Below the pieces are notes generated by a model. It was given only the letters and a program-made list of their open reading frames with translations, searched no databases and was not told the origin of the DNA. DNA of 64,000 nucleotides, taken from the NCBI RefSeq assembly GCF_000315625.1, contig NW_005434625.1, forward strand, positions 141,726 through 205,725, in the 5' to 3' direction. The translations under genes and the position numbers were made by a program. Shown here one piece after another: positions 526-44,800 of the stretch; position 1 is the stretch's first letter, and every line of letters starts with the position of its first letter. Origin of the DNA: Guillardia theta CCMP2712 (lineage: Eukaryota; Protista; Cryptophyta).

Positions 526-645
526 CTCTTCCTTCCTTCCACTTCTGGCTACTTGAGGCGACAGCCTGCGCCGCACGTGCCATTTCTGCTGGGATCCCCC
601 AGCACTTGAGTACTGCAAGTTTAGCTCAAATAAGTAAAGGCAGAG

Positions 646-4307: not shown

Positions 4308-5142
4308 GATTTACTGGCAGAAGGTAAAAAGTGCCTCAAGCAGAACAAAGCAGGAACAAGCACAAGCCCGAAAAGAACCAGCACTGCTGGCACCCAGACG
4401 CGGCACCGCCAGCCCAAGCGCGAAGCCGCGCAGACAAGCAGCCGAAGGGTCAGGCAATCAAGCAACAAGCAGCAGGAGCATAAAATCCCTTAGACGCGAT
4501 ACCCGGAGGCAGCCGACTGACCACTGTCAGTCGAGACGTCCGCTGCCGCCACAAAGCGGGCGGCCGCGGACGGAGAAAGGGCAGCCGCCGACAAGGAGCC
4601 GGCGTTGCCCGGGGGTCCGCCTGGGGCAGCGGACGGAGGGAGGCTGGACACAGGAACACGGTACCGCTCGAGGTAGTCCCCCTCGCTAGCCTCCGAGTCA
4701 GCGGTAGCCGAGTCAGCGGTAGCCGCCCGTGACGGCGGCGACGCCGCAGCCGCATGCCCAAGGACCGGCGTGACCCGACCGATGCCGGGTAGGATGCATG
4801 CGAGCTCGGAATAGCAGCAAGCACCCCAGTGGTGTCGAGCTCTCCGGAGGCACCCGACGTCACAGTGAGGGACGGAGACGCCTCGCCAGCTCCGCGCCGG
4901 TCGTCGGCGCCACTCGACGTGTTTCCCCCATCGGAGTCGGAGGTCGGAGTGGGAGACCTCCGGCGAAGACTCCCCCTCGGGCGACTCGACAAAGTCCGAG
5001 GAGGAGCTGTCCTCTGGCTCGAGAAGTGCTTGCGCCCGCAAGGGCGTCATGCGCCTCGCACCAGACAAGAGCGCCTCCAGCGTCAGCTGCATAGTGAGGC
5101 GCTGATAGGTGGCGGCGCGTTTGCGAGCCAAGATTCTCAGCA
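4308..5142 (-). mobile_element. Longest near-contiguous 3' portion of the RLE retrotransposon (ORF end + 3' UTR with internal deletions + terminus)
   Basis: ORF 4490-5131 overlaps in sequence with the 6971-8050 ORF, ends SGYRV*, and continues into the UTR and the AGTAAATC terminus. Confidence 0.75.
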
Positions 5143-22250: not shown

Positions 22251-22322
22251 GGGGATTTGGTTTAGTGGCATAATGCTCGCTTCGGGTGCGAGAGGTCCCG
22301 GGTTCGATTCCCGGAATCCCCC
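22251..22322 (+). tRNA. tRNA-Pro(CGG), intronless
   Basis: GGGGATT/AATCCCC acceptor stem; anticodon arm CTCGC-TT-CGG-GT-GCGAG; T-arm CCGGG-TTCGATT-CCCGG. Confidence 0.97.
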
Positions 22323-22519: not shown

Positions 22520-26145
<3,626 letters not shown>

Positions 26146-26914
26146 CTATATTCAAGCCTGCTAGCCGGGTAGCGCCTGACCACACAGTTAGCAAGTGAAT
26201 TAAAAGAGAGTTGTAAATTAAATAATGCTAGTTGTAATTTTGGTAACCCCTTCCGTCCTAATAAAGTAACCCCCCCCCCCAAACGCTCCAAGCCCGTACA
26301 TTATTTTACTCAATAAACTATTCGCCCGAAGGGTCAAGGCCAGCCACCAACTTCATAAAAACTTTTAGAGTCCTCGACATGGAGCTCCGATCCCCACCCC
26401 CTCCATTCCCTGTGATCACCCCCTCCTTTTCCGATCCAGAACGGTTTTGATACTCCAGTACCCCCCAAGACCTCTACAGTAGTGCTTCATACCATCGTAT
26501 GTAGTAACGGACTCACTGGGAATAGGACCTTCCTAGGACCAAATACTCGGTTCCCTAGTGACGTATATGAAGCCTAGTTGTGCCTCCGGGATCGTCGGAG
26601 CTTCCGTACTTTTGCAAGTTGGAGGGGTGGGGTTCGTCGGCTGATGAGGATGAAGGGGTGGTGGGAGGAGACTGACCGGTAGTAGTGTTCGCATGTGAAG
26701 GCATTAGCCAGAAGGTCTAGACATGAATCAAAAACCTCGAATAAGATATTGATTATATTCATATAGAAGGGTATCGAATCATTGCTTGAGAAGAGGATAT
26801 AGAATTAAAGGGTAGGGGTTATGAATTTCTCAATTGAAGGGTAGGGTCTTTAGAAACTGTGATTCCCCTTCTTGAGGGTGGGGGCTGTATGAAAAGCTGT
26901 ACGAGTACCAAGAG

Positions 26915-27003
26915 AGGGAGAGGGAGAGGGAGAGGGAGAGGGAGAGGGAGAGGGAGAGGGAGAGGGAGAGGGAGAGGGAGAGGGAGAGGGAGAGGGAGAG
27001 GGA
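26915..27003. repeat. (GGGAGA)n microsatellite
   Basis: Directly visible in the sequence. Confidence 0.95.
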
Positions 27004-27056
27004 AGAGAGCGGGTGAGATAGACTCATAGAAGCATGAGCATGAGCATGAGCATGAG

Positions 27057-27227
27057 TGTTGTATACACAACCTTGCGTAAGACGTTGAGTTCAGATGATC
27101 TTAGGATCTCTGTTTATTAAGCACACACGCTCATCAGATCAGCAGCACCACTGCAGGAATCTGCATCGTCATCCTATTTCCCTACGCTACGTCCAAGGGG
27201 CGTCCGGTATGAGTCCAGAATACAACA
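27057..27227 (-). repeat. 3' LTR (171 bp, complete)
   Basis: TG...CA ends with 8-bp terminal inverted repeats; AATAAA on the minus strand; weak PPT GCAGTGGGAGCGA adjacent (27228-27240). Confidence 0.95.
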
Positions 27228-27292
27228 TCGCTCCCACTGCGAGACGACAAGAAGGTCCACCTGTCGTTGACTTCGCTCAGAAGAATCTTGAG

Positions 27293-30200
27293 TTAAGGAT
27301 CTGCAGAAGAAGAGGAAGAAGAGCGGCGGGAAGGTGACGCTTGAGCTAATAAAGAAGATTCAAATTGTTGAATTAAAGCACGAATACCAGATTTCTTGTT
27401 GAGTTCAGAAGCTGATTTCCAGGAGTGATCAGCTGGGTTAGGGTAGCCTTTCCAATGAACAAGATATTGGATACCACGACCACGTTGACGTTTGTCGAGA
27501 ATTTGTTCCACTTCGTATTCAAGTCCTTGAGCTGTCGAAAGAGGATCCGGTCGATCGACATGAAGCTCGAAGTTGGGATCACGGTCCTGATGGGGGCGAA
27601 GCCACTTGAGGTTGAAGACGCTGTGTTCAAGATGACGAAAGCGATCTGTCAGTTCGAGATGAACAGTGTTGTCAGAAACAAAGGAGAGGATCTTGAAGGG
27701 ACCGATGAAACGAGGACGGAGCTTGGGAAAGCTGTCGGTGATTGGAATATTCGTCGTTGAGAGCCACACGAGATCGCCGATGTTGAAATTGTGAGGGCGA
27801 CGGTGTTGGTCAAGGGTCTGTTCAGTTGAACGAGCCATGTGATCGAGGGCATCGCGAGCTGCTTCCATGTGCACTTGGATGGCTTCGCGAATGTCTTCAG
27901 GATCATCAGACGAGTTGGAAAGGGCAGGGAGAGCCAGTTGAGTTTTGACGTTGCGGCCATAAATAATCTCGAATGGCGCAAGGCCTGTTGAACGTTTGAC
28001 GGAAGAATTGTAATGCATCTCGAAGAGGGGAAGAAATCTGTCCCAGTCATGGTTGACGCGATTGGCACAGTAGATGCGAAGAGCTTCAATCAAGACGGAG
28101 TTGAGGCGTTCAGGTCGAGCATTGCCTTGAGGATAGTAAGGCGAAGAATGCTTGATTTTGACCTGCAAGAGTTCGAAAAGTTTAGTCCAGAAGGCAGAAG
28201 AGAAGATTTTTGCATTATCTGAAATGATTTCGTTGGGAAGGCCTTGGTTGGCGCAGACTTTCGAAACAAAAAGATCGGCAGCTTGTTGAGAGGTGAGAGT
28301 CTTCTTGCATGGAGACAGAAAGACACGTCCAGAAAAGTTGTCAACACAAACGAAGATCGAGTCGTAATGAGAACGAGTAGGCGGGAAGCCGGAAACAACA
28401 TCGATGGAGATTGTAGCAAAACGATCAGACGGAGCTGCTTGACTGTGCGACGGGCCCATCTGTGGCTTGCGATAAGATTTGTATTGGATGCAAGATTGAC
28501 AGGAAAGGATGTAACGTTCGACTTGTTGACGCATCGAGGGCCAATAAACAACAGGAACAAGAGCCAAGTATGTTCGAGAGAAGCCGCGGTGACTGTGAAG
28601 GTCATGGGCACGGTATAGAACTTCTTTGCGAACAGATTGAGGAATACAAATGCGTTGTCGGTGAAGACTATCTGTTAGAATCAGGAGATGATTTTCAATG
28701 TGAAAATGCTTGTACGATGGGTTGTTTTGAACTGCTTGATAGATTGTAGAAAAGTATGAACACGAGGAATATGCTTGGACGATTGCGTCGTGAAGAGATT
28801 CGACGAGAGAAGCATTATCAGCAGGAGCATCAAGAGCAAGGAGATGATGAAAATCTTGATCATCTGAATGTAGGATTGCGTCATCGCGTGGAGGTGCGAC
28901 GTCGTCGTCGGGGTATTGGCGGCTGAGAGCGTCAGGGACGACATTATCGGTACCTTTCACGTGCGCGATCTCGACGATAGAGAATTCACTGAGAGTTTCT
29001 AACCAGCGGCGAAGACGACCTTTGAGATCCTTTTGGGTTTGAAAGTACGTGAGAGCCTTGTGATCAGTACGAAGGATGATGGGCTTGCCAAGCAGATAAA
29101 ATTGGAAGTGAAGAAGCACGTCTTTGATGGCCAAAAGTTCGCGCTCAGTGGTTTGATAATTTCTTTCTGCATCAGTAAACAGGCGACTGTAGAATCCAAT
29201 GACTTTCTCTTTGTTGTCAGCGTCGTACTGAAGAAGAACACCGCCGAGAGCTGTGTTTGAGGCATCGGTGTGAACTTCTGTTCTAAGCGCTGGATCAAAG
29301 TGAGAGAGAATTGGGGAGGAGGTTAACCGGTGTTTGAGAAGATCAAAGGCTTGCTGACACTCGGGAGTCCATTGAAAGACGACATTCTTACGAAGAAGAG
29401 CATGAAGAGGAGCAGCAATGTGGGCATAGTTGCGAATAAAGCGACGGTAATATCCGGAGAGCCCAAGAAATATTTTGATCTCCTTTGCGTTGCTGGGTGG
29501 TGGCCAGTCAAGGATCGCGCTGGTCTTACTGGATTGAGTCGATATACCATCAGCAGAGATTTGATGACCGAGGAACTCGACACTATCTTGAAAGAGCTTG
29601 ACTTTTGATTTCTTGAGGTAAACTTGATTCTCGCGGCAGCGCAGAAGAACGCGACGAAGAGTGTTGAGGTGTTGATCAAACGTGCCGAAATCAAGGATGA
29701 GCAAGTCATCAATGTACGGGAATACACTGGTAATATCACGAAAGAGAAGAGTAATCCATTCTTGAAAAATATTGCTGGCGTGAATGTAGCCGAATGGAAG
29801 ATTGCGAAACTGATATTTGCCAAACTTGGTGATGATGGCGACATATTTGCGATGATCAGGGGCAACAGGAATTTGCCAAAAACCGCGGAGAAGATCGAGA
29901 GCTGAAATCCAAAGTTTGTATTCAGAAGGGTGCAAGAAACGCTTGGATTTGCGAATGACCTCGGCGACAGATTCTAACATCTCCTCAGGGTTAGGAGTAG
30001 GATACCTGGGGTTGCTGTGGACCATGGCATTAAGTTTTCGCAAGTCAGTGCAAAGACGATAGCTGGAGGGATCTGTAGGAGATCGAGGGTCGTTTTTGCG
30101 GCGACTGTAAAGCACGGGGAATCCAAAGGGGCTGTTGGAAGGTTCGATGATGTTGCGAGATAACAAATATTCCAACGTCTTTTGAAGTTCTTGTTCGAGG

Positions 30201-31066
30201 AAAAGCGGGAGCCGATAGGGTCGTAGACTGACAGGTTTAGCATCAGGTAAAATGTCAATGGTGGCCTGAAATTCACGAGAAATGTTATAATTGGCGGGCA
30301 GATCATCGGTAATGACATCAGAAAATTCGTCCAAAAGTAAAGAAATTGCTTGCTCCTCTGGGGACACATCAGAAGAACGAGCCGGAGAGAAAGAACTGGC
30401 TGACGGTGGCGTGGAGGATGAATCAACTTGGAGAACGCAAAGAAACCAATCGTCCTCATCGTTGTCTTGTTGTTGAGAAGCAAAAACATCGGTCAATGAC
30501 AGGAAAGTAACTTGCGCAAAGGATTGGGGAGCTGTAAGAGAATTAAGCGGAACCATTTCACATGTCGGAAGACGCACGAGTTGTTGCTTGTGGGAAGATT
30601 CAATCCATACTTCACGGGTTCGGGCACGAAAAACAAGTCCATATCGAGTTTGCCACGTCAGGGAAAAAATGCATGTAGATAATGTAGAAGGCAGCACATT
30701 GAAATTATCGGTAAAGGAGTGTTTGCCAATTGAATAAGTAAGAGAAATAATGCCGAGAGTCTGTAAGTGAACTCCATTGGCGACGCATACAGGGATACGA
30801 ATAGAGCTGTCAATAGCTGATAAGGGAATATGCAAACGATCGAGGAGGGCGGTCGAAATAACATCGACAGCAGCACCGCCATCGAGAAGAGCTGTAAAAT
30901 GATAAGGGTCAGCATCAGGAGAAATAGATGAACAAGTCACGGGAAATTTGATGAGATCGGTGACCAGCGATGCTGAATTGTGCAGAACGGAAGGGGACGG
31001 AGTTTCAGCTGAGAAGATAAAATGAGAACAAAGCTGGGGCTCCGTATAAGAAGAAATCATGCTCAT
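27293..31066 (-). CDS. pol: Pol polyprotein: aspartic protease, RT, RNase H, integrase, chromodomain
   Basis: LLDGGA (PR); LDLLRGFWQI, LPFG, YIDD (RT); TDAS, ERELLAI, TDH (RH); H...H...CQSC and D,D,E (IN); GPF; EYEVEQILDKR...YLVHWKGY (chromodomain). ORF uninterrupted. Confidence 0.97.
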   Translation of the reverse strand: MSMISSYTEPQLCSHFIFSAETPSPSVLHNSASLVTDLIKFPVTCSSISPDADPYHFTALLDGGAAVDVISTALLDRLHIPLSAIDSSIRIPVCVANGVHLQTLGIISLTYSIGKHSFTDNFNVLPSTLSTCIFSLTWQTRYGLVFRARTREVWIESSHKQQLVRLPTCEMVPLNSLTAPQSFAQVTFLSLTDVFASQQQDNDEDDWFLCVLQVDSSSTPPSASSFSPARSSDVSPEEQAISLLLDEFSDVITDDLPANYNISREFQATIDILPDAKPVSLRPYRLPLFLEQELQKTLEYLLSRNIIEPSNSPFGFPVLYSRRKNDPRSPTDPSSYRLCTDLRKLNAMVHSNPRYPTPNPEEMLESVAEVIRKSKRFLHPSEYKLWISALDLLRGFWQIPVAPDHRKYVAIITKFGKYQFRNLPFGYIHASNIFQEWITLLFRDITSVFPYIDDLLILDFGTFDQHLNTLRRVLLRCRENQVYLKKSKVKLFQDSVEFLGHQISADGISTQSSKTSAILDWPPPSNAKEIKIFLGLSGYYRRFIRNYAHIAAPLHALLRKNVVFQWTPECQQAFDLLKHRLTSSPILSHFDPALRTEVHTDASNTALGGVLLQYDADNKEKVIGFYSRLFTDAERNYQTTERELLAIKDVLLHFQFYLLGKPIILRTDHKALTYFQTQKDLKGRLRRWLETLSEFSIVEIAHVKGTDNVVPDALSRQYPDDDVAPPRDDAILHSDDQDFHHLLALDAPADNASLVESLHDAIVQAYSSCSYFSTIYQAVQNNPSYKHFHIENHLLILTDSLHRQRICIPQSVRKEVLYRAHDLHSHRGFSRTYLALVPVVYWPSMRQQVERYILSCQSCIQYKSYRKPQMGPSHSQAAPSDRFATISIDVVSGFPPTRSHYDSIFVCVDNFSGRVFLSPCKKTLTSQQAADLFVSKVCANQGLPNEIISDNAKIFSSAFWTKLFELLQVKIKHSSPYYPQGNARPERLNSVLIEALRIYCANRVNHDWDRFLPLFEMHYNSSVKRSTGLAPFEIIYGRNVKTQLALPALSNSSDDPEDIREAIQVHMEAARDALDHMARSTEQTLDQHRRPHNFNIGDLVWLSTTNIPITDSFPKLRPRFIGPFKILSFVSDNTVHLELTDRFRHLEHSVFNLKWLRPHQDRDPNFELHVDRPDPLSTAQGLEYEVEQILDKRQRGRGIQYLVHWKGYPNPADHSWKSASELNKKSGIRALIQQFESSLLAQASPSRRSSSSSSADP

Positions 31067-31105
31067 CGTCGAACTGCAATAACCGAGAGCATGACCTGCG
31101 GTACC

Positions 31106-33049
31106 CTATTCCTGAGGCGGAGGATCAGCAGGAGGCTGAGCTCTTGCTGACGAGGACAAAGAGACTGTCCCAGGAGGAGCAGAAGCGGATGCGACTGCAG
31201 GGGAATGCGTGACGGGAGAGCCCGGGTTAGGAGCTGGAGCACCATTCTGAAGGAGAGCCGTGATGGCATTGACGATGGCGGCTTGACTCGCTGGAGGATG
31301 GGAGGGCTGTGTCACGGCGGAAGAAGCATTGCGATCAGCTTGCTTTTTCTTGCGGCAGTACTTCAACGTGTGTCCAGAACGTTTGCAGTACGTGCAGAAA
31401 TAATTTGGGGGAGAACCGGAGGGCTGCGCGGGAGCTGGGGAGGGCTGAACTCCTGGCGTCGACGGAGAGGGTTGAAGGGCACAAATGGGCTGTGGAGCCG
31501 GAACCAAAGAAGACGGTTTAACGAAGGCGAAGGCTTTCTGTGCGAGAAGCGACATCGTGGCAGCTGTAGCAGGATGCATGTGCGCGATGGGGACCATGAC
31601 GAGTCGAACTTCCGGGTCGAGAAAACCGTTGGCGAATTGTTGAAGAAGATTGTGCTCTTGAAATACGACAGTTTCAGATTTGTAGAGTAAGAGTTCGTCA
31701 ACATAACGTTGCGTCCGAAGAGTATAATCAGTGATCGATTCGTTGACGCCTTGACAGAGATTGGTCACTTGGTGTTGGAGTTTGGCGATGTGAGCCGCGG
31801 GAGGAAATTGCTGCGTGATGAAAAGACAGAATTCCGACCAAGGAAGAAGAAACCATTCGTCGAGAGGACGATCGTGAGACATGCGTTGAAGAACAGAGTC
31901 ATCAAGAAATGTCGTTGTATAGTAAACCCAGAGGTGGCCGGGAATGCGTTGAACAGACAGAGCGCGTCCCATCTGAGAGAGCCAGCTGTGAATGCTTCGA
32001 GAATCAGCCTGACCGAGAAAGGGGGTGATGGACGTTCTGGGCTGAAATTTCGGGAGTTTGTCACCAGGGAAAGGTTGAGAAGGACGGACGGGCGTGGGCT
32101 GAGGAATCAGCGACATGCACGCGTCACGAGAGGGATTCTGCTGCATGTTAGAAGCACGAATACCTGGCAACGGAGTCATCAGTCGCTCTGGTAAGAGAGA
32201 AACTGGAGGTGGAGCTTCGGGAATCGACGAAGGGTCTGACTCAACCGGGATGACATGCGTCTGCATCAGCCGAGGGCTGGGAGGGGAGGGAGAACTCGCC
32301 ATGCGCGGAGACGGCTGCGCGCTAGACGGTGCTGGGAGGGGCTTCAAGCGCTGGATTGCTGCCACAGAGGTTGAAAGGGCGGAAACCAGACGGTCTTGAA
32401 GTTCGTAGGATTGAGCAAGTAGACGATCATTGAATTCCTGAGATTGCTCAAATTGACGATCCAGCTTGCGTTCAAGTGCTTCTTGACGTTGCTGGGCATC
32501 TGCGTTCTGTTGCAGGAGTAAAGCAAAAAGTTGACGAAGAGATGGTTCCTTGTCGTTGGTGGCAGGAGAATTTCGACCTGAAGACATCGCAGGGATGGGC
32601 TCTGCGGCAGGGGCATTCCGACCCGAAGACATCGCAGGGATGGGCTCTGCGGCAGGTGCATTCCGACCCGAAGACATCGCAGGGATGGGCTCTGCGGCAG
32701 GGGTACGCGGAGAAAAAGCACCAAAAGCGGAAGGACGGGAAGCATGCGGAGCCGGAGACTCCTGTCCGAAGATAGACGGGGCTGGTACTGGCGTGAAAAA
32801 AAATGGGCGAGCACCAGAAGCTGGATGGGAATCCTGCTGTGGTCGATCTTGCATAATTGAATCATCATCTTTCGTTGCGGAAAAAGGACGGGGGAATTGA
32901 AATTGTTGAGCTCCAACATTTGGATGGATCGAAGTTGAATCAGAGACTTGTTCCGTAGATGTTGGAATCCTTCGTTCACTGGTCTGAGCCTTACGCGATT
33001 TTCTCACTTTCAATACTGATAGTTTGCTTGCTTTCTTTGCTGAAATCAT
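31106..33049 (-). CDS. gag: Gag (capsid-like region + CCHC knuckle CTYCKRSGHTLKYC; 3x 15-aa repeat PAAEPIPAMSSGRNA)
   Basis: 647-aa ORF directly downstream of the PBS; LCQGVNESITDY major-homology-like region; zinc knuckle. Confidence 0.93.
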   Translation of the reverse strand: MISAKKASKLSVLKVRKSRKAQTSERRIPTSTEQVSDSTSIHPNVGAQQFQFPRPFSATKDDDSIMQDRPQQDSHPASGARPFFFTPVPAPSIFGQESPAPHASRPSAFGAFSPRTPAAEPIPAMSSGRNAPAAEPIPAMSSGRNAPAAEPIPAMSSGRNSPATNDKEPSLRQLFALLLQQNADAQQRQEALERKLDRQFEQSQEFNDRLLAQSYELQDRLVSALSTSVAAIQRLKPLPAPSSAQPSPRMASSPSPPSPRLMQTHVIPVESDPSSIPEAPPPVSLLPERLMTPLPGIRASNMQQNPSRDACMSLIPQPTPVRPSQPFPGDKLPKFQPRTSITPFLGQADSRSIHSWLSQMGRALSVQRIPGHLWVYYTTTFLDDSVLQRMSHDRPLDEWFLLPWSEFCLFITQQFPPAAHIAKLQHQVTNLCQGVNESITDYTLRTQRYVDELLLYKSETVVFQEHNLLQQFANGFLDPEVRLVMVPIAHMHPATAATMSLLAQKAFAFVKPSSLVPAPQPICALQPSPSTPGVQPSPAPAQPSGSPPNYFCTYCKRSGHTLKYCRKKKQADRNASSAVTQPSHPPASQAAIVNAITALLQNGAPAPNPGSPVTHSPAVASASAPPGTVSLSSSARAQPPADPPPQE

Positions 33050-33089
33050 CCTTTGAGATTCTGAATCAGTGCTGGAATGTGAACCAATT

Positions 33090-33097
33090 CGCTACCA
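33090..33097 (-). other. Primer binding site TGGTAGCG (initiator-Met type)
   Basis: On the minus strand: LTR...CAACA-TA-TGGTAGCG. This is complementary to a tRNA 3' end CGCUACCA, as in yeast tRNAiMet-primed Ty elements. Confidence 0.7.
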
Positions 33098-33099
33098 TA

Positions 33100-33258
33100 T
33101 GTTGTATACACAACCTTGCGTAAGACGTTGAGTTCAGATGATCTTAGGATCTCTGTTTATTAAGCACACACGCTCATCAGATCAGCAGCACCACTGCAGG
33201 AATCTGCATCGTCATCCTATTTCCCTACGCTACGTCCAAGGGGCGTCCGGTATGAGTC
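33100..33258 (-). repeat. Inner 5' LTR copy (159 of 171 bp)
   Basis: Identical by eye to 27057-27215; lacks the outer 12 bp. Confidence 0.95.
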
Positions 33259-35373
33259 AGACCCTTCGTCGATTCCCGAAGCTCCACCTCCAGTTTCTCT
33301 CTTACCAGAGCGACTGATGACTCCGTTGCCAGGTATTCGTGCTTCTAACATGCAGCAGAATCCCTCTCGTGACGCGTGCATGTCGCTGATTCCTCAGCCC
33401 ACGCCCGTCCGTCCTTCTCAACCTTTCCCTGGTGACAAACTCCCGAAATTTCAGCCCAGAACGTCCATCACCCCCTTTCTCGGTCAGGCTGATTCTCGAA
33501 GCATTCACAGCTGGCTCTCTCAGATGGGACGCGCTCTGTCTGTTCAACGCATTCCCGGCCACCTCTGGGTTTACTATACAACGACATTTCTTGATGACTC
33601 TGTTCTTCAACGCATGTCTCACGATCGTCCTCTCGACGAATGGTTTCTTCTTCCTTGGTCGGAATTCTGTCTTTTCATCACGCAGCAATTTCCTCCCGCG
33701 GCTCACATCGCCAAACTCCAACACCAAGTGACCAATCTCTGTCAAGGCGTCAACGAATCGATCACTGATTATACTCTTCGGACGCAACGTTATGTTGACG
33801 AACTCTTACTCTACAAATCTGAAACTGTCGTATTTCAAGAGCACAATCTTCTTCAACAATTCGCCAACGGTTTTCTCGACCCGGAAGTTCGACTCGTCAT
33901 GGTCCCCATCGCGCACATGCATCCTGCTACAGCTGCCACGATGTCGCTTCTCGCACAGAAAGCCTTCGCCTTCGTTAAACCGTCTTCTTTGGTTCCGGCT
34001 CCACAGCCCATTTGTGCCCTTCAACCCTCTCCGTCGACGCCAGGAGTTCAGCCCTCCCCAGCTCCCGCGCAGCCCTCCGGTTCTCCCCCAAATTATTTCT
34101 GCACGTACTGCAAACGTTCTGGACACACGTTGAAGTACTGCCGCAAGAAAAAGCAAGCTGATCGCAATGCTTCTTCCGCCGTGACACAGCCCTCCCATCC
34201 TCCAGCGAGTCAAGCCGCCATCGTCAATGCCATCACGGCTCTCCTTCAGAATGGTGCTCCAGCTCCTAACCCGGGCTCTCCCGTCACGCATTCCCCTGCA
34301 GTCGCATCCGCTTCTGCTCCTCCTGGGACAGTCTCTTTGTCCTCGTCAGCAAGAGCTCAGCCTCCTGCTGATCCTCCGCCTCAGGAATAGGGTACCGCAG
34401 GTCATGCTCTCGGTTATTGCAGTTCGACGATGAGCATGATTTCTTCTTATACGGAGCCCCAGCTTTGTTCTCATTTTATCTTCTCAGCTGAAACTCCGTC
34501 CCCTTCCGTTCTGCACAATTCAGCATCGCTGGTCACCGATCTCATCAAATTTCCCGTGACTTGTTCATCTATTTCTCCTGATGCTGACCCTTATCATTTT
34601 ACAGCTCTTCTCGATGGCGGTGCTGCTGTCGATGTTATTTCGACCGCCCTCCTCGATCGTTTGCATATTCCCTTATCAGCTATTGACAGCTCTATTCGTA
34701 TCCCTGTATGCGTCGCCAATGGAGTTCACTTACAGACTCTCGGCATTATTTCTCTTACTTATTCAATTGGCAAACACTCCTTTACCGATAATTTCAATGT
34801 GCTGCCTTCTACATTATCTACATGCATTTTTTCCCTGACGTGGCAAACTCGATATGGACTTGTTTTTCGTGCCCGAACCCGTGAAGTATGGATTGAATCT
34901 TCCCACAAGCAACAACTCGTGCGTCTTCCGACATGTGAAATGGTTCCGCTTCATTCTCTTACAGCTCCCCAATCCTTTGCGCAAGTTACTTTCCTGTCAT
35001 TGACCGATGTTTTTGCTTCTCAACAACAAGACAACGATGAGGACGATTGGTTTCTTTGCGTTCTCCAAGTTGATTCATCCTCCACGCCACCGTCAGCCAG
35101 TTCTTTCTCTCCGGCTCGTTCTTCTGATGTGTCCCCAGAGGAGCAAGCAATTTCTTTACTTTTGGACGAATTTTCTGATGTCATTACCGATGATCTGCCC
35201 GCCAATTATAACATTTCTCGTGAATTTCAGGCCACCATTGACATTTTACCTGATGCTAAACCTGTCAGTCTACGACCCTATCGGCTCCCGCTTTTCCTCG
35301 AACAAGAACTTCAAAAGACGTTGGAATATTTGTTATCTCGCAACATCATCGAACCTTCCAACAGCCCCTTTGG
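33253..35373 (+). repeat. 2121-bp inverted duplication of internal gag-pol (source 30123-32243)
   Basis: ORFs 33317-34390 and 34430-35422 reproduce the gag C-half, protease and start of RT on the opposite strand. At least one substitution (N to H, 34952). Confidence 0.95.
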
Positions 35374-35529
35374 CTTGCGTAAGACGTTGAGTTCAGATGA
35401 TCTTAGGATCTCTGTTTATTAAGCACACACGCTCATCAGATCAGCAGCACCACTGCAGGAATCTGCATCGTCATCCTATTTCCCTACGCTACGTCCAAGG
35501 GGCGTCCGGTATGAGTCCAGAATACAACA
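35374..35529 (-). repeat. Outer 5' LTR copy (156 of 171 bp)
   Basis: Matches 27072-27227; followed by the TSD ATGAG. Confidence 0.95.
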
Positions 35530-35606
35530 ATGAGCATGAGCATGAGCGATATTGTGAGACAAAGTCTAATACTTGATGTACAAGCAAAAGCTGATAACTT
35601 CAACAG

Positions 35607-36803
35607 ATGCTGGCGGACGTCGTGACTCTACAAGGCAGCGATCATGAGCTATCGGCCGTTTCGCCTCCACCCCTGGATCCCGCTTCGTCTGAACCATATT
35701 TCTCTCAAGCACCAACCGTAGAAAAATCCGTGGAAGAGGAGCCGGCCCTGAGTGTTTTCCTCGACAGCATTCAATTTGAAAATGGGTTCGGTGTGGTCAA
35801 GATCTCTTCGAAGATTCCTGCAGAAACTGCCAAGATTATCAGCACCAGGATGTTCCTCGTGGATGCTGTCAGCTTTGTCTCTGCTACTGCTGGCCCGACG
35901 TTCAGTTGTGGTCTGAGTGGTTTAGATCTTCTCTTGAAGTACTTGTCCTCGCTGATGGGCGTTGGGATGAAACAGGGCAGCTTGTATCTAGTTTTTCTCC
36001 CTGAGCACATCGTCTATGCGTTTCAGATAGCTGCATTCTTCGTTTCGTATCATGCAATGAGGATCCAAGACATGGACACGTACTATAAGGCGACTGGTCT
36101 CAACGTGACATGTTTCATCTTGATGTTTCTCGTCCTTTTCAACAAGCGGCCTCCATTACAGTTGTGTCGTCGAGCACCACGATCTAGAGAGCCTTCCAAA
36201 CTTGTGCAGTATGCAGATTTATTCTATCACGTCGTGATGATGGTTCTCATCTTCATCGCCTTAATCACTTCAGGAGTTTGTACACACTGCGATGGGTCGT
36301 ACTCGCCCAGTTTGTCGCATTTGTGTCAATACAATGCTCGCAGTCAAGGTTTCCATGATGATCAAAATGTCAACACTCGTGTCAGTCTGTCGTCCTGTAC
36401 ATATGTTTGTGATAGTGACAGGAAGGACGCCTGCATTGGAGGTGTCATTACGAATCTGCTTGTTATTATCATGTGAGATGTGCATGCTTTCGTCAAAAGC
36501 AACTGAAACGACTTTTGCAGGGTATTTGTGCGTATCTTCATGGGAGTTTTGGCATTTCTATTTGAGCTTCGAAAAGAAGGGAGGAAATCTAGTGCCGCTT
36601 TCCCGAGTTCTCTCGTGACTCTGCATGGACCATCCTCCCATGGATTTCCTTTTCGAGTTTGTGTCTCAGAAGAGAGCGTGGAAGTCATCATGTCGCAGAT
36701 CAAGAAGACGAGAGACCCCAAGAAGATTCAAACAGGCTTCGAGCTCTTTAGCCCGTTGACGTCCTGGTGTTGGATGGCTCTCTTTGGAAAGGTCAATGTT
36801 TAA
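35607..36803 (+). CDS. Hypothetical multi-pass membrane protein (2 exons)
   Basis: 289-aa ORF with several hydrophobic segments; GTGAGA...TTTGCAG intron (~36473-36520) joins it in frame to VFVRIFMGVLAFLF...KVNV*. Confidence 0.6.
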
Positions 36804-36809
36804 TGAGGA

Positions 36810-38013
36810 CCTAATGGCAAGAGAATGCGATGTCTTGCTGCACTTGCATGTCTCTTCTCTAACCTCGTCTTTGAGGAAGTAAGCAACAGAACAGAAGGAC
36901 CACAAAGATAGAGAGTAGCATGAAATTTGATGAATAGAATTACAACGCCGAGAGTCCCATGAGAACGAGAGGTATTGCAGTCAATCACTCCTCCTCGCCT
37001 CGATCTCCTGCGAGGCATAAGTTGGACTACTACACATTCACGAGGGTTCAGACCTGCTTGAGCCCTTCAGGCTTGACTTCTATCTTGGCCGGCACAATCT
37101 GCATATCAATGAGATGCTGCACAAGAGAAGCTGCGGGTTACCGGTGCCCCTCCCTGTCCGATAGCATCATACTGCTGCTGGAACGAGCCGATGCGGATCT
37201 CTTCATCCTTATTTTTCTTCCAATCATGAAGGAGCTTGATGTAAGGATTGATATCAGACTCCTTCATCTACGAAACGAAAGAGTTAGTATACACAACTAC
37301 AAGGGAAACCTCACGTTGGCGATTTCTTCTAGGAGTTGCTGTCCGGGGGACTTCCTCTCCATCTCACTTCTCAAAAGTTTGTGCTTCTTTCGTATCTCTT
37401 TGATGTCTTTCATGACCTTTGCGCGAGAGTGTTGCAGACTGGTGAAGTTCCCCAGACATCTCCCGTCTGGTCCGATAACAGGTTCGATGTCTTCGATTCG
37501 CCCCCCAGCCTCTTCCACCTTCTTGATGATGTTCTCCGGTGACAGCGCTTTGATCAGTTCCTCTGCCCTATCGACGAACTGCATGGACTGGTCAAGGAGT
37601 TCCGGGTTCGGCTCGTCATCCTTCAGGATACCATTGCTGTCTTCGTCGGGATCCACGTTGTCCACGTCGTTGTGAATCACATTGGACCTGAGTTTCGGTT
37701 CGCCCTGCCTAGGGAACATCTCTTCCTCTTGTTCCTGGAACTGTGCGTCCAGCTTATCGATGAGCTCTCTGACCTGGTCCAGTATTTCATCCTCCTTTCC
37801 TGCATCTCTCTGTGTGGTATCAAGATGCTCTATCGAGCCTCCTCGAAGCCGCCGGTGCAAACAATGGTTCAGTCCTTGCGCCGATGTCCTTCCTCGAGTT
37901 GCTACTTCTGCTCTCCCAACTGATTCTAAGCACCGTGATCCACCCGCTCCTGTAGTTCCTGTCGCCGCCATCGTCATCGCCGCCATCGCCATAAGCAGCC
38001 GCAGCCGCAGCAT
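36810..38013 (-). CDS. Hypothetical coiled-coil protein with N-terminal signal/targeting peptide and RRLRGG motif (3' end approximate)
   Basis: MLRLRLLMAMAAMTMAA..., LHRRLRGGS, then an acidic/charged helical region in ORF 37297-38862; further exons lie downstream. Confidence 0.55.
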
Positions 38014-38123
38014 GTTCGTGCTGATGAGCAGAGGGATCACAGGTTGATAACTTGAATATAGGCTGATAGCCAACCAAATAGCCATAAACATGGTTATTTT
38101 AACACAAACATCGTATTCATGTA

Positions 38124-38159
38124 ACTTTAATACTAAAATGAATAGTTTAGTATTAAAGT
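38124..38159. promoter_or_regulatory. Perfect 14-bp inverted repeat with 8-bp spacer in an AT-rich divergent intergenic region
   Basis: ACTTTAATACTAAA-ATGAATAG-TTTAGTATTAAAGT between head-to-head genes. Confidence 0.6.
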
Positions 38160-38231
38160 GAAGCAATTTAAGGCAAAGGCCTGCCAGTAAAGGGCGGTAT
38201 GTTGGGATCGGTGGAGCAAGGGATCGCCAAG

Positions 38232-39950
38232 ATGGCGGGACTAGAGCGGAGCTGGAGGAAACGATGGGAGCGCGCCAAGGCTCCTCTCGCAGCCATGCTG
38301 AGCCTACGAGCGGAGATGCTGGCGGAGATACGAGAGGAGATGGAGCGAAGGGAAGAAGATGTCCTGGTGGGTTGCTTCCACGAAGAAGAGAGATGGGATC
38401 AAGGTATCGGAGAGAAGGAAAGAGGCAGGACTGACCCAGATCTCGGGATCGAAGGAGCAGATCGGTCATTTGAGGAGGAAGCCAGAGACATGGTCGATCA
38501 GCTGCTTGCTCAGAAGAAAGTCTACGAAGACACTGCTGAGCGCCTTGGAATCGATGCGCAACCTGATGGTCAGTCAGCAACGGGAAAGGACAGCGACCTT
38601 GTATGGAGACCGACGGATGAGCGATGCCGCATGATGCGCAAGAAGGAGATGCATCCCTTCGCTCCATCTCCTCCAGCCGCAGGTCACACGGACGCATATG
38701 GCGGTACCGCTGGTGCTGAAGATGAAGGGGTGGCGCCAAATCAAGACAAGGAGGCCATGACGCCACAACTGTCATGCTCCTTGTGCCCTCCCCCTGGATC
38801 GTCTCGAACGAGGGAGAGGATACGACAGAAGCTCTTGGACCTCGATGAAAGTTTGCGATCAACCCGGCGAGAAATCGACATGGAGCAGGGCGAGCTGGTC
38901 GGATGCTGTTGTCTCTCCCTCCTGCCCTCTGATCGCCATACCGTAGCTCGCTCCTTCCAACACGTCCCCCAGCTTCTTGAGAGGACGCGCGAATTCACGA
39001 TCAAGCGCTGCAGGTAAGTCCGAGCACTCGATGCTGGTGCGGAATGAGGAGAGCGTTCGGTGAGCTCGCTTGCTGGGAACTTGGAGGGGCTTGACGACTT
39101 GGTAGTAGGAGTGTTTGTGCGGATGAGGAGGGAGAAGAAGGTCGAGAGAGAGCGAGCTCTGCCCTAGCTCATGTGTCTGCAGATCTCTTGCTGGACATGG
39201 AGAAGACTCTGTCGGAGTACTGCGATGTTAGTCCCCTTGCTCCCTCCCCGGCTTGTTGTGATGTAGCAGCAGGAGATGTCTGGGTTGCGAGGACGCGTGC
39301 AGTCGCTGTTGGTAGAGAGGAGAAGCTTCCTAGGCCTCTCCGACGTTCTTCGTGACAAGAACAGACAGCTCGAGCTCGAGCGGCGGCGCTTGCAGGTTTC
39401 GCTTCCTTGATCCCCCGCCTGCCTGACTTGTTGCCTGCACGGGCTACAGTCGATGCTCGATGGCGAGCGGAGCAAGGTGCAAGCAGCAGCTGACAGGCAG
39501 TCGAGTGTCAGAGAAGCTGAGGAGGAGCTGGGGGAGTCGCGGAAGCTCAAGGTGTTGTGTCGCTTGTCCTCGGCTGCTGCGCTCACTGCATGTTCAGCTG
39601 CTGCTCGCGAGGCGAATCGCTGGCGTCATCGACCTTCTGCAAGGAGCGAACCCAAGCCGAAGGATGCGCGACGTGAGGATGGGGCGAGACGCGAGAGATG
39701 AAGGGAGGGGGTGGAGGAGGGGGAGAGGGGCGATAGGAGGGAAGGGCTGATGGGATGAGGAGGGGTGGGAGGGTGGGAGAGACAAGGCTGGAGGGGAGGG
39801 GAGGGGAGGGATGGCAAGTTGAATGATTGAGGAGCAGGCGATCGCAGAGCTGCAGGGCATCTCGTTGATGTTGAGCGGGAAGGGCGAGCAGAGGAGGAGG
39901 CGGCGGGAACATGCAACAAGCTGTAAAGACAGCAAATAATACATGACAGG
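38232..39950 (+). CDS. Hypothetical coiled-coil protein (multi-exon)
   Basis: ORF 38199-39017 rich in E/R heptads, followed by short GT-AG-bounded exons. Confidence 0.45.
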
Positions 39951-41816: not shown

Positions 41817-44800
41817 GAGATGGCGATGGCCGATGATGACGCATTTGTAGCAGCAGCAGCAAGGAGATGCGGTAGCAGCTCTCACCAGGTCTAGTCCTTC
41901 CTTATGCTCGGCGCTTTTCGTCTTGTCATTTTCCAGGTATTGTCCGATCACTTCCGCCAAGTTCTGCTCTCCCGTCAGCTCTTCCCCCCCCCCCCTCCCC
42001 TTCCCAAATCCCCTCCTTCCCTCNNNNNNNNNNNNNNNNNNNNNNNNNNNNNNNNNNNNNNNNNNNNNNNNNNNNNNNNNNNNNNNNNNNNNNNNNNNNN
42101 NNNNNNNNNNNNNNNNNNNNNNNGGAGGAGGGGGAGAGGAGGAGGCTAGTGACCAGTGTGTTGTAGATGGTGATGATACGCTGGTTGAAAACTGGAGTGT
42201 TGGCTGGAAGCACCCCAGGACAGAAGGCAGGCTTCAAGGTGAGCTGGCAGAATTGTTGGCAATCGCAGAGGAAAAGAGGATTGAGGCATAGAAACGAGGA
42301 GGAAGATGGCGGGGTTAAAAGAGGCGAGGAGGGAGAGGAGAAACCTTAGACAACCCTCTAACGGGAGAGAGAAGCTTCAACGAGAAGAAGTCGAGGATCC
42401 AGGTAGGGACGATGAGGTAGCGGATGTGGGACAGCCAGGCGAAGGAGGCGTAGGTTGACTCGGGAGCTCCTGGCCCTGTGACCTGCAGGACAAACCAGTT
42501 GGCGTTGGGCTGATTGGCTCCCCCCGGATGAAAGAGCGAGTCCAGGTTGATCTTGGACGTCTCGCTGAAGTCCACCGGCACCGTCGGCTCCTGGACGGGG
42601 ACGAGGCTCAGATTGTAGGAGGAGACGGAGAGCAGCGGGCTGGATGAGTGAGCTTCGATTGGGTCGGCGAGGGACTGCAAGGAGATCTGCCCCTTGTCGG
42701 ACACCATCGTCCACTGCTGCACCAAGTTGCCTGGCGTCCAAGGCATGTTGATGCTGTCGACGCAGGCGCCGCACCTGGGCTGGTCAGGGATGGGAAACAA
42801 GTCGGCGGAGGTGGCGCCGGAGCAGACTTGGTGGCAGCAGGTGCCGTCCTCTGCACAGAGGCCGTTGAGGGAGGAGTAGGGGGCCTCGCAGTTGGGCTTG
42901 CAGAAGCACTGCTGCGTCTGAACGAGGGTGCAGTCGGACGGGTTGTAGCAGCCGCTGACGAGGGGGGTGGGCAAGTTGGGGCAGGGGGAGGTGCTGTCCT
43001 CCTGCAGGATGCTGGGGTCAGGAGCGACAGTGACGTTGCTGGGCTTGATGAACTCGCAGATGTCCTGGCAGTTGCTGTCCACGTAGAGCGAGTTGTTGGC
43101 GGCAGTGAGGCAGACGAGGTTGTCGCTCTTCTGCCAGACCGTCGCTGACGTCATCTGCCTTGTCGTCACGATCATGTCCGCGTCCACTGAAGTCATCGTC
43201 GCCTTGGGGACGCTCGCCTGCACCCGATCGAGGATGAGTCCTCACCCTCCGATCTCACACTCACGCTCCTCCCCCCCCCTCCTACTGTTCCTGTTCCTGC
43301 TCCTCCATGCCCCCTCTCCCGTCTTTCATCCCCCTGATCCCACCCCTCCCCTCCCTCTCCCTCTCGTCTTGACTTGCTTGTCCCTCCTCTCTCTCCTCCG
43401 CCTCCTCTGACCGTGAGGGTCCCGAGATCCATCGCCAGCAGCTCTCCGCTCCTCACGTTGAAGATGAACTCCTTGGCGCTCACGTTCTCTAGCCGCGCTT
43501 GCACGAAGCGACCTAAGGGATGGCAGGATGAGAAGAAGCTCAGCGAAAGGGAGGAGAGTGAAAGAAGTAGGAGGAGGAAGCGAGAAACCCAAGGACAAGT
43601 AGTAGTAGTAGTAGCAGTAGCAGGAGGAGGAGCAGCAGGAGCAGGAGGAGGAGCAAGACCAGGAGTTTGGCAGATTCACCTTGCATGGAGAAAGTGTTTG
43701 GGCCGAAGTCAAGGCCGAGACCTGCCGTGTCAGGGTCCATGGGCCCCCCGCGGATGCTCGTCACGTTGTCACCCTTGGAGTTGATGAAGAGCGAGGGGAT
43801 GACGTAGCGGTCAGGGATGATCACCTGACAAGCGAACTGTCAGATTCCCAGCTGCAGCCGAGCAGAGGGCGAGCAGGTCGACATCACCTGGACGGAGCAC
43901 CAGTAGTTGAGGTACTTGACGTCCTCGGGGAGGTTGTTGAAGATCTCTAACTGGGAGTCCGGGCTGCAGGTGTCGCTCTTGAGGTAGATGTCCTTGTTCT
44001 TGGGGAAGGAAAACCTGATCTTCATCGCCTCCAGCTGGTTCTCGGGAGCTGGGAACTTGCGGGACGGGACGAAGCGGACGTAGCAGTTGTCAAGAGAGAG
44101 GGAGATGCTCTTCTGAGAGTCGAGAAGGTAGGAGCGAAGGAAGACGAGGGGGCCGGAGGTCTTGGACATGGAGCCCGAGGCGATGATGCCGGCGATGAAG
44201 ACGGCGACAACGAGGAAGAGGAAGTGAGCGTTGGAGGATCCTTCAGAGGGGAGCAGGTGGTACTTGCGTCCCTTGTAGAAGAACTCCCATTTCTTCTTCC
44301 TCAGGTATCGGAAGAGCGTCCCGTGCCGCTGCGTCAGCCATGCGATGATGAGGTAGCTGGAGATGAGGAAGGCAACGCCGAAGAGGGCGGAGAGCGACGC
44401 GATGAGCACGATGTCCTGCTTCACCGGCTTGCACAGCCCGTAGGCTGCGTTGGTGCTGTAGAACTTGGAGTAGTTGGTCCCATTGAACGCGAGTCCCTCC
44501 TCGCAGTCCTCGAACTTGGGTTTGCTCTTCCCGATCATGCACTTCCCTTTCCCCCCGCACGTCGTCGGGCACCAGCCGCACAGTCGGTCGCGGTTGCAGT
44601 CGAGGCAGGTGGGGTACCGGCAGGTCTCCTTGGCCCCCACCACGGCGTCGAGGGTGCCGGAGGTGAGGCCGGGGAGGGGGGGGCTGCAGGGCATGCGGTT
44701 GTCTCGCGTGCAGGTGGTGGTTTGGATGTTGGTCAGCGGGTCGTAGCGCGCGCAGGTCGTGTCGCGCTTGCACAGGCCGTAGTTGCCCATGTCGTTGGCC

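What the first reader, a model, noticed from the sequence alone, without database searches (positions are those of the whole stretch)
30123..35529. LTR retrotransposon carrying its own antisense/hairpin cassette: LTR - inverted gag-pol (2.1 kb) - LTR - sense gag-pol
Seen: inside one TSD-bounded element (ATGAG...ATGAG), the 5' LTR occurs twice (35374-35529 and 33100-33258, overlapping by ~144 bp of LTR sequence). Between the copies lies an exactly 2121-bp inverted copy (33253-35373) of the element's own 30123-32243. One junction has TGAGTC microhomology and the other is blunt. The copy differs by at least one SNP (34952), which argues against a plain collapse. Inference: the outer LTR promoter would transcribe antisense gag/PR and could polyadenylate at the inner LTR's AATAAA, while the inner LTR drives the intact sense gag-pol. 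Read-through would give a 2.1-kb-stem hairpin with a ~1-kb loop. Established analogy: maize Mu killer, an inverted-duplication derivative that silences its family via siRNA. This could be a self-silencing 'killer' allele of a young chromovirus, made by double template switching.
Basis: partly seen in the sequence, partly recalled or inferred. Interest (0 to 1): 0.85.

Follow-up and report, generated by a model that had tools for sequence, protein, structure and literature searches.

The report
Retrotransposon carrying inverted copy of itself
A very young jumping gene in a cryptophyte alga carries a backwards 2.1-kb copy of its own gag/protease region inside a partly duplicated front repeat; the structure is in the sequence as described and is probably a copying accident, while the idea that it silences its own family is untested.

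Summary
One minus-strand Ty3/gypsy chromovirus occupies 27057-35529. It has a complete 171-bp 3' LTR and a canonical inner LTR-PBS-gag-TAG-pol body. Upstream lie a 2121-bp inverted copy of its own 30123-32243 (one mismatch) and a second, outer LTR piece. The outer piece holds LTR positions 1-156 and the inner piece 13-171, so 144 bp of LTR is directly duplicated. One junction has 6 bp of microhomology (chance about 0.002), extendable to 11/12; the other is blunt.

New here: the orthologous locus of a sister cryptophyte (about 94% identical) is an empty site joining both flanks. The whole composite therefore sits at one lineage-specific insertion site. It is very young: arm divergence is 0.05%, flank divergence 5.8%.

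The best reading is a one-off product of two template switches, most likely during reverse transcription and less likely during later replication or repair. An assembly artefact is not excluded without reads.

The 'self-silencing killer' idea is only architecture. No RNA or small-RNA data were available, and I found no paper on RNAi in cryptophytes. The hairpin arms hold gag/PR only, not the LTR promoter, unlike Mu killer. Moderate interest.

The parts
27052..27056 (.). Left target-site duplication ATGAG, inside a (GCATGA)n microsatellite
   Evidence: The sister-taxon empty site joins this flank to the right flank.
27057..27227 (-). Complete 3' LTR, 171 bp, TG...CA with 8-bp terminal inverted repeat; AATAAA at 27113-27118 on the minus strand
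27228..27237 (-). Putative short polypurine tract (GTGGGAGCGA) directly upstream of the 3' LTR
   Evidence: Assigned by position only; weak.
27293..31066 (-). pol ORF, 1257 aa from the first ATG: protease (weak hit), RT, RNase H, integrase zinc finger and core, SH3, chromodomain. The frame is open from the gag TAG.
   Evidence: Pfam hits. 78% identical to a Hanusia phi transcript-derived protein.
31106..33049 (-). gag ORF, 647 aa, ending in TAG (31106-31108), in the same frame as pol. Contains a 45-bp x3 tandem repeat at 32561-32703.
   Evidence: Retrotrans_gag below cut-off; TAG and its context conserved in L001
30123..32243 (-). Sense arm of the inverted repeat. Canonical element positions 1028-3148: the last 379 gag codons, the TAG, and pol up to residue 315 counted from its first ATG (protease region, ending about 11 residues before the Pfam RT hit begins at residue 326).
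30544..30544 (-). The only arm difference. The sense copy has codon AAT (Asn), as in relative L001. The inverted copy (34952) has CAT (His), which is the derived state.
32244..33252 (-). 1009-bp spacer ('loop'): the first 268 gag codons and part of the next, 5' UTR, PBS, and most of the inner LTR
33081..33097 (-). Primer-binding site TGGTAGCGAATTGGTTC, 2 nt after the inner LTR; identical in L001
33100..33258 (-). Inner LTR piece, sense positions 13-171 (lacks the first 12 nt of U3). Its junction to the PBS is the canonical one seen in L001. AATAAA at 33156-33161.
33253..33258 (.). Junction B: 6-bp microhomology TGAGTC shared by the inner LTR and the inverted arm. Extended homology CCGGT[A]TGAGTC vs CCGGT-TGAGTC (11/12).
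   Evidence: chance p about 0.0017 for 6 bp or more
33253..35373 (+). Inverted arm: a reverse-complement copy of 30123-32243. It reads as antisense gag/PR on the element's own (minus) strand.
35373..35374 (.). Junction A: blunt join of the inverted arm to LTR sense position 156, with no microhomology
35374..35529 (-). Outer LTR piece, sense positions 1-156 (intact 5' terminus, lacks the last 15 nt of U5; no PBS follows it). AATAAA at 35415-35420.
35530..35534 (.). Right target-site duplication ATGAG in the (ATGAGC)n microsatellite

Best explanation
This is a real, very recent, one-off rearranged copy of an otherwise canonical and apparently coding-intact cryptophyte chromovirus.

Origin. The rearrangement was made by two template switches in a single synthesis event, most likely during reverse transcription inside the particle. 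While the 5' LTR was being built, the growing strand left the LTR template and copied 2.1 kb of the opposite strand of the element's own gag/PR region. It then returned to the LTR 144 nt behind the point where it had left. One switch was guided by the CCGGT(A)TGAGTC homology; the other was blunt. Both cDNA termini stayed intact, so integrase inserted the 8.5-kb composite as a unit into a (GCATGA)n microsatellite.

Predicted consequences (inferred, not shown).
- The outer LTR piece keeps the whole of U3 and R, so it should start transcripts that run antisense through gag/PR and meet a 3'-LTR-like U3-R at the inner LTR.
- This would give a roughly 2.3-kb polyadenylated antisense RNA lacking both PBS and PPT, or a 2.1-kb-stem hairpin if it reads through.
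- The inner LTR, which lacks only 12 nt of U3, can still drive a normal genomic RNA. That RNA would regenerate ordinary copies, so the cassette is not inherited by progeny made from it.
- The locus is therefore a potential source of dsRNA against gag/PR and of transcriptional interference in cis.

Whether it silences anything is unknown. I regard it as a by-product rather than an adaptation.
For: - Anatomy is exact.
- The four breakpoints (LTR 156, LTR 13, internal 1028 and 3148) all lie inside the element. None is at an element terminus, which rules out integrase-mediated nesting.
- The layout 'LTR 1-156 / inverted internal / LTR 13-171' is what two strand switches produce. The aberration is confined to the 5' LTR, the part templated by plus-strand strong-stop DNA; this follows from the standard reverse-transcription scheme summarised in PMC6894440.
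- Junction B microhomology is non-random (p about 0.0017) and extends to 11/12.
- The inverted copy carries the derived base, while the sense copy keeps the base shared with L001. This fits an error made while copying.
- Both flanks are contiguous in a sister taxon's empty site, so outer LTR and 3' LTR bound a single insertion.
- There are no gaps within 8 kb of the element on the left side or 6.5 kb on the right (nearest N runs end at 19016 and start at 42024).
- RT-made inversions in integrated retroelements have precedent: 1-3% of sequenced HIV-1 proviruses (PMC9278108).
- The family is canonical elsewhere. L001 shows LTR-PBS-gag-TAG-pol with the same PBS and the same in-frame TAG.
Against: - No reads, so neither junction is independently verified.
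- Only one locus has this structure.
- Nothing distinguishes an RT event from a post-integration DNA-polymerase event.
- I found no polypurine run or other landmark at internal breakpoints 1028 and 3148 that would explain where the switches occurred.
- The TSD is weak because of the microsatellite.
- Transcription start, polyadenylation and promoter activity of a 171-bp LTR are assumed, not measured.
Confidence: 0.5

Rival explanations
1. The structure is real but arose after integration. A normal element inserted first. Later a replication-fork or break-repair template switch (FoSTeS/MMBIR-like, giving a DUP-INV-DUP topology) copied 2.1 kb of the element in inverted orientation into its own 5' LTR and duplicated 144 bp of LTR.
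For: The topology and junction signature are the same: one microhomology junction and one blunt one. The template lies only 1-3 kb away in cis. Break-induced synthesis is also error-prone, so it fits the single derived base. The TSD and the empty site are equally compatible.
Against: The event uses only element sequence and hits precisely the LTR that reverse transcription builds last. Reverse transcriptases switch templates far more often per kilobase than replicative polymerases (established knowledge; PMC9278108). This argument is not decisive.
Confidence: 0.25
2. It is an assembly or library artefact. The inverted segment and outer LTR piece were created by chimeric clones or reads, by polymerase-made inverted chimeras, or by mis-joining of reads from several near-identical family copies. 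The true locus would then hold a plain 6.2-kb element.
For: - The window is a scaffolded draft with six N runs.
- The region 3300-9800 is a suspicious mosaic of direct and inverted blocks.
- Near-identical arms of 2.1 kb cannot be resolved by short reads alone.
- The single SNP could be a base-call error.
- No independent assembly of this organism was found.
Against: - Two novel junctions with 0 and 6 bp of overlap cannot be produced by collapsing repeats; each needs reads that contain it.
- Two independent chimeras would have to fit together into a closed, co-linear structure with the correct flank on the far side.
- The right flank next to the outer LTR is the true neighbour of the left flank.
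- Random ligation chimeras are not expected to show 6-11 bp of homology.
- No gap lies near the element.
Confidence: 0.12
3. One reading: the composite is a working 'killer' allele. Its outer-LTR-driven antisense or hairpin RNA is diced into siRNAs that silence the whole family in trans. This concerns function and is compatible with either real-structure origin.
For: Architecture only. There is a complete U3-R promoter piece upstream of 2.1 kb of antisense gag/PR. A downstream LTR carries AATAAA. The arms are near-perfect at 2120/2121. An intact sense unit lies in cis. Precedents are Mu killer and the candidate EVD antisense nested insertion (PMC11624286).
Against: - No expression or small-RNA data.
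- No paper on RNAi in cryptophytes was found.
- The arms exclude the LTR promoter. In the best-studied LTR case (EVD), gag-directed siRNAs and gag methylation were dispensable for transcriptional silencing, and the hairpin trigger remained inconclusive.
- Termination at the inner LTR would prevent hairpin formation.
- It is a single young locus with no sign of selection.
Confidence: 0.12

Closest known systems
Maize Mu killer (inverted duplication derivative of MuDR; Slotkin et al. 2005, as cited in PMC11624286)
   Same: A naturally arising inverted duplication of part of an autonomous transposon, at a single locus, able in principle to give a long hairpin RNA homologous to active family members.
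   Different: - Mu killer derives from a DNA transposon, was made by DNA rearrangement, and is transcribed from a flanking host promoter (from my own knowledge of the system).
- Its hairpin covers the terminal-repeat promoter region, and trans-silencing was shown genetically.
- Here the element is an LTR retrotransposon and the promoter and terminator would come from its own duplicated LTR.
- The arms exclude the promoter, an intact sense copy sits in cis, and no silencing has been shown.
EVADE (Arabidopsis Ty1/copia) antisense nested insertion into itself (PMC11624286)
   Same: An LTR retrotransposon locus with sense and antisense copies of the same element within a few kb, proposed as a hairpin or convergent-transcription source of siRNAs.
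   Different: The EVD case is an integrase-mediated nested insertion of a whole second copy with its own TSD and inverted LTRs. Here no junction is at an element end, only an internal 2.1-kb segment is inverted, and the LTR pieces are direct. The EVD authors call their own case inconclusive.
Retroviral proviruses with internal inversions made during reverse transcription (HIV-1; PMC9278108)
   Same: An integrated retroelement with intact ends and a segment of its own genome in inverted orientation, attributed to RT template switching and seen as a minority of defective products.
   Different: The reported HIV-1 proviruses with inversions are classed as defective, one of them also carrying a deletion of more than 1 kb. 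Here the inverted segment is an extra copy placed inside a duplicated 5' LTR, which leaves a complete coding unit.
Replication-based DUP-INV-DUP / fold-back inverted duplications (FoSTeS/MMBIR; e.g. PMC3907307 and PMC11790251, listed)
   Same: Two template switches, an inverted duplicated segment flanked by a direct duplication, and junctions that are microhomologous or blunt.
   Different: Those events are described at kilobase-to-megabase scale in chromosomes and do not respect element boundaries. Here all four breakpoints lie inside one 6.2-kb retroelement.
L1 5' inversion (non-LTR retrotransposons; PMC2912911, listed by title and abstract only; the twin-priming mechanism is from my own knowledge)
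   Same: An RT-made inversion within a newly inserted retroelement copy.
   Different: That mechanism is target-primed reverse transcription at the chromosome and gives an inverted, truncated 5' part rather than an added inverted duplicate.

Membership tests
Ty3/gypsy chromovirus (LTR retrotransposon with chromodomain integrase) | Direct LTRs ending TG...CA | tested here: met
   171-bp LTR, TGTTGTAT...ATACAACA; three pieces, 100% identical where they overlap
Ty3/gypsy chromovirus (LTR retrotransposon with chromodomain integrase) | pol domain order PR-RT-RNaseH-integrase, with a C-terminal chromodomain | tested here: met
   Pfam hits: RVP_2 (weak), RVT_1, RT_RNaseH, Integrase_H2C2, rve, SH3_Tf2-1, and Chromo at residues 1184-1237
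Ty3/gypsy chromovirus (LTR retrotransposon with chromodomain integrase) | PBS next to the 5' LTR and a purine tract next to the 3' LTR | tested here: met
   The PBS TGG... lies 2 nt after the inner LTR and is identical in L001. The PPT is short and weak.
Ty3/gypsy chromovirus (LTR retrotransposon with chromodomain integrase) | gag protein | tested here: inconclusive
   Retrotrans_gag scores 18.6 bits, below the 24.1 cut-off. A 647-aa ORF in the gag position is conserved in L001.
Ty3/gypsy chromovirus (LTR retrotransposon with chromodomain integrase) | Short target-site duplication and an empty site in relatives | tested here: met
   ATGAG on both sides, which is weak because it lies in a microsatellite. 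Empty orthologous site in sister-taxon contig L059.
Mu killer-type transposon 'killer' locus | Inverted duplication of part of an autonomous element | tested here: met
   2121-bp arms, 2120/2121 complementary
Mu killer-type transposon 'killer' locus | The hairpin covers the element's promoter or terminal region, so that siRNAs can direct transcriptional silencing | tested here: not met
   The arms span canonical positions 1028-3148 (gag C-terminus and PR). All LTR pieces are in direct orientation.
Mu killer-type transposon 'killer' locus | Transcript through both arms and siRNAs from the duplicated interval | not testable with these tools
   No RNA or small-RNA data. No independent assembly or transcript of this organism was found.
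Mu killer-type transposon 'killer' locus | Heritable trans-silencing of active family copies | not testable with these tools
   Needs genetics. No paper on RNAi in cryptophytes was found in three literature searches.
RT template-switch rearranged retroelement copy | Breakpoints internal to the element, not at integrase-processed ends, with both element termini intact | tested here: met
   Breakpoints are at LTR 156, LTR 13, and internal 1028 and 3148. The outer LTR 5' end and the 3' LTR end are intact and adjoin the TSD.
RT template-switch rearranged retroelement copy | Homology at the switch points | tested here: inconclusive
   Junction B has 6 bp (11/12 extended), p about 0.0017. Junction A has none.
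RT template-switch rearranged retroelement copy | Made before integration, in one replication cycle | not testable with these tools
   A post-integration polymerase switch gives the same sequence.
DIRS-like / inverted-repeat retroelements | Tyrosine recombinase, inverted terminal repeats and an internal complementary region as the family norm | tested here: not met
   The element has a DDE integrase (rve) and direct LTRs. Relative L001 has a plain LTR-PBS-gag start.

The most novel reading that the evidence does not exclude
A single aberrant reverse-transcription cycle produced, in one step, a self-contained silencing module. The retrotransposon's own duplicated LTR supplies the promoter and terminator for antisense or hairpin gag/PR RNA, next to an intact sense copy. 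This locus would then act as a natural trans-acting 'killer' allele of a currently active chromovirus family, in a cryptophyte lineage for which these searches found no described small-RNA defence.
Probability: 0.1. Interest if true: 0.75.

Novelty: new variant of a known kind. Interest (0 to 1): 0.42.

Why it matters
How a host first recognises a newly active retrotransposon is an open question. Rearranged copies that make double-stranded RNA are the favoured trigger, but few natural examples exist, and the LTR-retrotransposon cases are inconclusive (PMC11624286). This locus is a clean, datable candidate. It is a near-perfect 2.1-kb inverted self-copy placed between two promoter-bearing LTR pieces, in an element whose LTRs are identical and whose insertion site is still empty in a sister taxon. 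If junction-spanning reads confirm it, it also records a double strand switch, probably by a chromovirus reverse transcriptase, that adds sequence rather than deleting it. One strand-specific RNA-seq library and one small-RNA library from the strain would settle whether it does anything. If it does nothing, it is simply a well-documented defective by-product.

Tried and rejected
Searches that gave nothing useful:
- Exact look-ups of the window's pol, gag, junction-spanning and flanking ORFs found nothing on record. No independent assembly of the junctions could therefore be retrieved. Gene callers may choose other start codons, so this is not proof of absence.
- Homology searches with whole pol and with the 330-aa junction ORF, done separately because of the length filter, gave only one close family copy, L001 (about 90% nt), and one Hanusia phi protein. 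L001 begins inside its LTR, so it cannot show what lies upstream.
- Scans of JGI metagenome contigs and IMG/VR with pol gave only distant gypsy elements (44% identity or less) or nothing.
- Literature searches for RNAi, Argonaute or Dicer in Guillardia or cryptophytes, and for the accession PRJEB17505, returned nothing relevant.

Models rejected:
- A nested antisense insertion of a second copy followed by deletions. It would duplicate 5 bp of LTR, not 144 bp, and neither junction is at an element end.
- A DIRS-like native architecture, because the element has integrase, direct LTRs and a canonical relative.
- A tandem LTR-internal-LTR dimer followed by inversion, which needs more steps.

Other negative results:
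- I looked for an internal polypurine tract or other landmark at breakpoints 1028 and 3148. The only purine run of 10 nt or more is at canonical 4059-4068.
- The extended homology at junction B hints that the switching strand ran from the LTR into the internal region. I do not rely on it to choose between plus-strand and minus-strand models.

Nothing in the window looked human.

Full report
**Observation**

- The repeat finder reports one 2.13-kb inverted repeat (30120-32250 / 33246-35376) and three copies of an LTR-like direct repeat.
- A base-by-base comparison shows perfect reverse complementarity over 30123-32243 vs 33253-35373 (2121 bp), apart from one position, 30544/34952.
- The LTR is 171 bp (TGTTGTAT...ATACAACA).
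  - The left copy, 27057-27227, is complete.
  - The inner copy, 33100-33258, stops 12 nt short of its sense 5' end.
  - The outer copy, 35374-35529, stops 15 nt short of its sense 3' end.
  - All three are identical wherever they overlap, so the two upstream pieces share LTR positions 13-156.
- TGAGTC (33253-33258) belongs to both the inner LTR and the arm. The other junction (35373/35374) is blunt.
- The spacer is 1009 bp, the composite 8473 bp, and the canonical unit 6214 bp.
- No assembly gap lies between 19017 and 42023.

**What the element is**

The element lies on the minus strand.
- A 647-aa gag ORF (31106-33049) ends in TAG. It is followed in the same frame by pol; the ORF from its first ATG is 27293-31066, 1257 aa.
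- pol has Pfam hits to RT, RNase H, integrase zinc finger and core, the Tf2-type SH3 domain and a C-terminal chromodomain, plus a weak protease hit. This makes it a Ty3/gypsy chromovirus.
- The best named relative is a Hanusia phi (cryptophyte) protein at 78% identity.
- A host exon in the window encodes eIF3B. Its best named hit is the cryptophyte Baffinella, and its best overall hit (98% aa) comes from ENA sample ERZ930064.
- That sample's contig L004 is 94.3% identical in DNA to window 12038-15317.
- The window is therefore nuclear DNA of a cryptophyte, and ERZ930064 contains a sister taxon. I did not establish the species.

**The canonical family structure**

L001, from the same ENA sample, is a family copy about 90% identical.
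- It shows LTR, a 2-nt spacer, and the PBS TGGTAGCGAATTGGTTC, followed by gag, the same in-frame TAG in the same context, and pol.
- The inner LTR-PBS-gag-pol-3' LTR unit of the window is therefore the normal element. The in-frame stop is a family feature, probably programmed read-through, and not damage.
- The inverted segment and outer LTR piece are the addition.

**One insertion site, empty in the sister taxon**

The ATGAG duplication sits in a (GCATGA)n microsatellite on both sides. It is weak evidence alone, with about a 1 in 6 chance from repeat phase.

To test it, I searched the right-flank ORF against the representative library and fetched its contig, L059, from ERZ930064.
- L059 positions 3-192 align to the window's left flank (26837-27046).
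- L059 positions 188-3162 align to the right flank (35558-38551, 94.2% identity).
- Nothing lies between them.

So the two flanks are true neighbours, and the whole 27057-35529 composite is a lineage-specific insertion. A mis-join of two different loci is unlikely.

Arm divergence (1/2121, or 0.05%) is about 1% of the flank divergence between the two taxa (5.8%), and the LTRs are identical. The event is very recent.

**Origin**

None of the four breakpoints (LTR 156, LTR 13, internal 1028 and 3148 in canonical coordinates) is at an element end. Integrase-mediated nesting is therefore excluded, and nesting would in any case duplicate 5 bp of LTR, not 144 bp.

The layout LTR(1-156) / inverted internal / LTR(13-171) is what two strand switches give:
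1. A growing strand leaves the LTR.
2. It copies 2.1 kb of the opposite strand of the element.
3. It returns to the LTR 144 nt behind its point of departure.

Supporting details:
- At junction B the 6-bp overlap is non-random: p is about 0.0017 in a simulation with the element's own sequence. It extends to CCGGT[A]TGAGTC vs CCGGT-TGAGTC, 11/12.
- The inverted copy carries the derived base (CAT His), whereas the sense copy keeps AAT Asn as in L001. This fits an error made while copying.

I favour reverse transcription for three reasons:
- The aberration is confined to the 5' LTR, the part templated by plus-strand strong-stop DNA in the standard scheme (PMC6894440).
- Only element sequence is involved.
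- RT-made inversions in integrated proviruses are documented (PMC9278108).

A post-integration replication or repair switch gives the same sequence and cannot be excluded. No landmark such as an internal polypurine tract explains the internal breakpoints.

**Could it be an artefact?**

For an artefact:
- The window is a scaffolded draft.
- It has a suspicious mosaic region at 3300-9800.
- No independent assembly of this organism could be found.

Against an artefact:
- Repeat collapse cannot create junctions with 0 and 6 bp of overlap; reads must contain them.
- Two independent chimeras would have to close into a consistent structure that ends at the correct syntenic flank.
- Ligation chimeras should not show significant homology.

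I put the artefact at about 0.12. The single SNP, 421 bp from junction A, is weak evidence either way.

**Function**

Everything in this section is inference.
- The outer piece keeps U3 and R, so it should promote transcription into 2.1 kb of antisense gag/PR.
- The inner piece then presents a 3'-LTR-like U3-R with AATAAA (33156-33161 on the element strand).
- Termination there gives an antisense RNA without PBS or PPT. Read-through gives a hairpin with a 2.1-kb stem and a 1-kb loop.
- The inner LTR can still make normal genomic RNA. Reverse transcription of that RNA would restore a plain element, so the cassette is not transmitted by it.

Three points count against the 'killer allele' reading:
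- No RNA or small-RNA data are available.
- No paper on RNAi in cryptophytes turned up.
- The arms exclude the LTR promoter, unlike Mu killer. In the best-studied LTR case (EVADE), gag-directed siRNAs were dispensable for transcriptional silencing, and the authors judged the antisense nested-insertion trigger inconclusive.

**Verdict**

- It is a new variant of known kinds: TE inverted duplications with hairpin potential, and RT-made inversions.
- Interest is moderate, with a cheap decisive test available.

Noticed in passing
window 3300-9800: A dense mosaic of 90-190-nt blocks repeated both directly and inverted at 93-100% identity (more than 20 inverted pairs and several direct families). 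It is interrupted by N runs at 2483-2899 and 5298-5533. It is either a scrambled repeat array or a poorly assembled region.
   Followed up: no
window 60666-61085 and 63340-63876: A pair of direct repeats of about 400 bp, 95-97% identical and about 2.7-2.8 kb apart. They could be the LTRs of a small non-autonomous element or a tandem segmental duplication.
   Followed up: no
window 31106-31108 (minus strand) and L001 about 2197-2199: gag and pol are in the same frame, separated by a single TAG. The context ...CAG GAA TAG GGT ACC GCA GGT... is conserved between the window and the 90%-identical relative. This suggests programmed stop-codon read-through in this chromovirus family.
   Followed up: partly
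window 32561-32703; L001 547-723: A tandem repeat inside gag. The window has three 45-bp units at 91-92% identity. The relative has two 87-bp units at about the same place, so this gag region expands and contracts.
   Followed up: no
L059 150-200 vs window 27020-27056 and 35530-35560: The (GCATGA)n microsatellite that received the element has about 1.5 units in the sister taxon but about 6-7 units in the window when summed over both flanks. The window also has an extra GATATTGTGA. The target repeat therefore expanded in the lineage that acquired the element.
   Followed up: partly
L001 5853-6351: The relative's contig leaves homology with the window element inside the chromodomain region and has no 3' LTR. 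It is either a truncated copy or a chimeric metagenome contig.
   Followed up: no
window 43840-49116 (minus strand): A 1758-aa open reading frame in a 60% GC stretch with no Pfam hit, and a 543-aa ORF on the opposite strand. It may be a low-complexity or repeat-rich host gene, or an effect of composition.
   Followed up: no
window 25590-25995, 26950-27010 and 276-563: Long microsatellite and minisatellite arrays: one of 10-bp period, (GAGGGA)n immediately left of the insertion site, and a 16-bp CT-rich array. The element sits in a simple-repeat-rich intergenic stretch.
   Followed up: no
window 12809-13843 and 22251-22322: Host genes: a large eIF3B exon (Pfam eIF2A-type beta-propeller; best named hit Baffinella, 72%) and a tRNA-Pro(CGG) gene.
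   Followed up: partly
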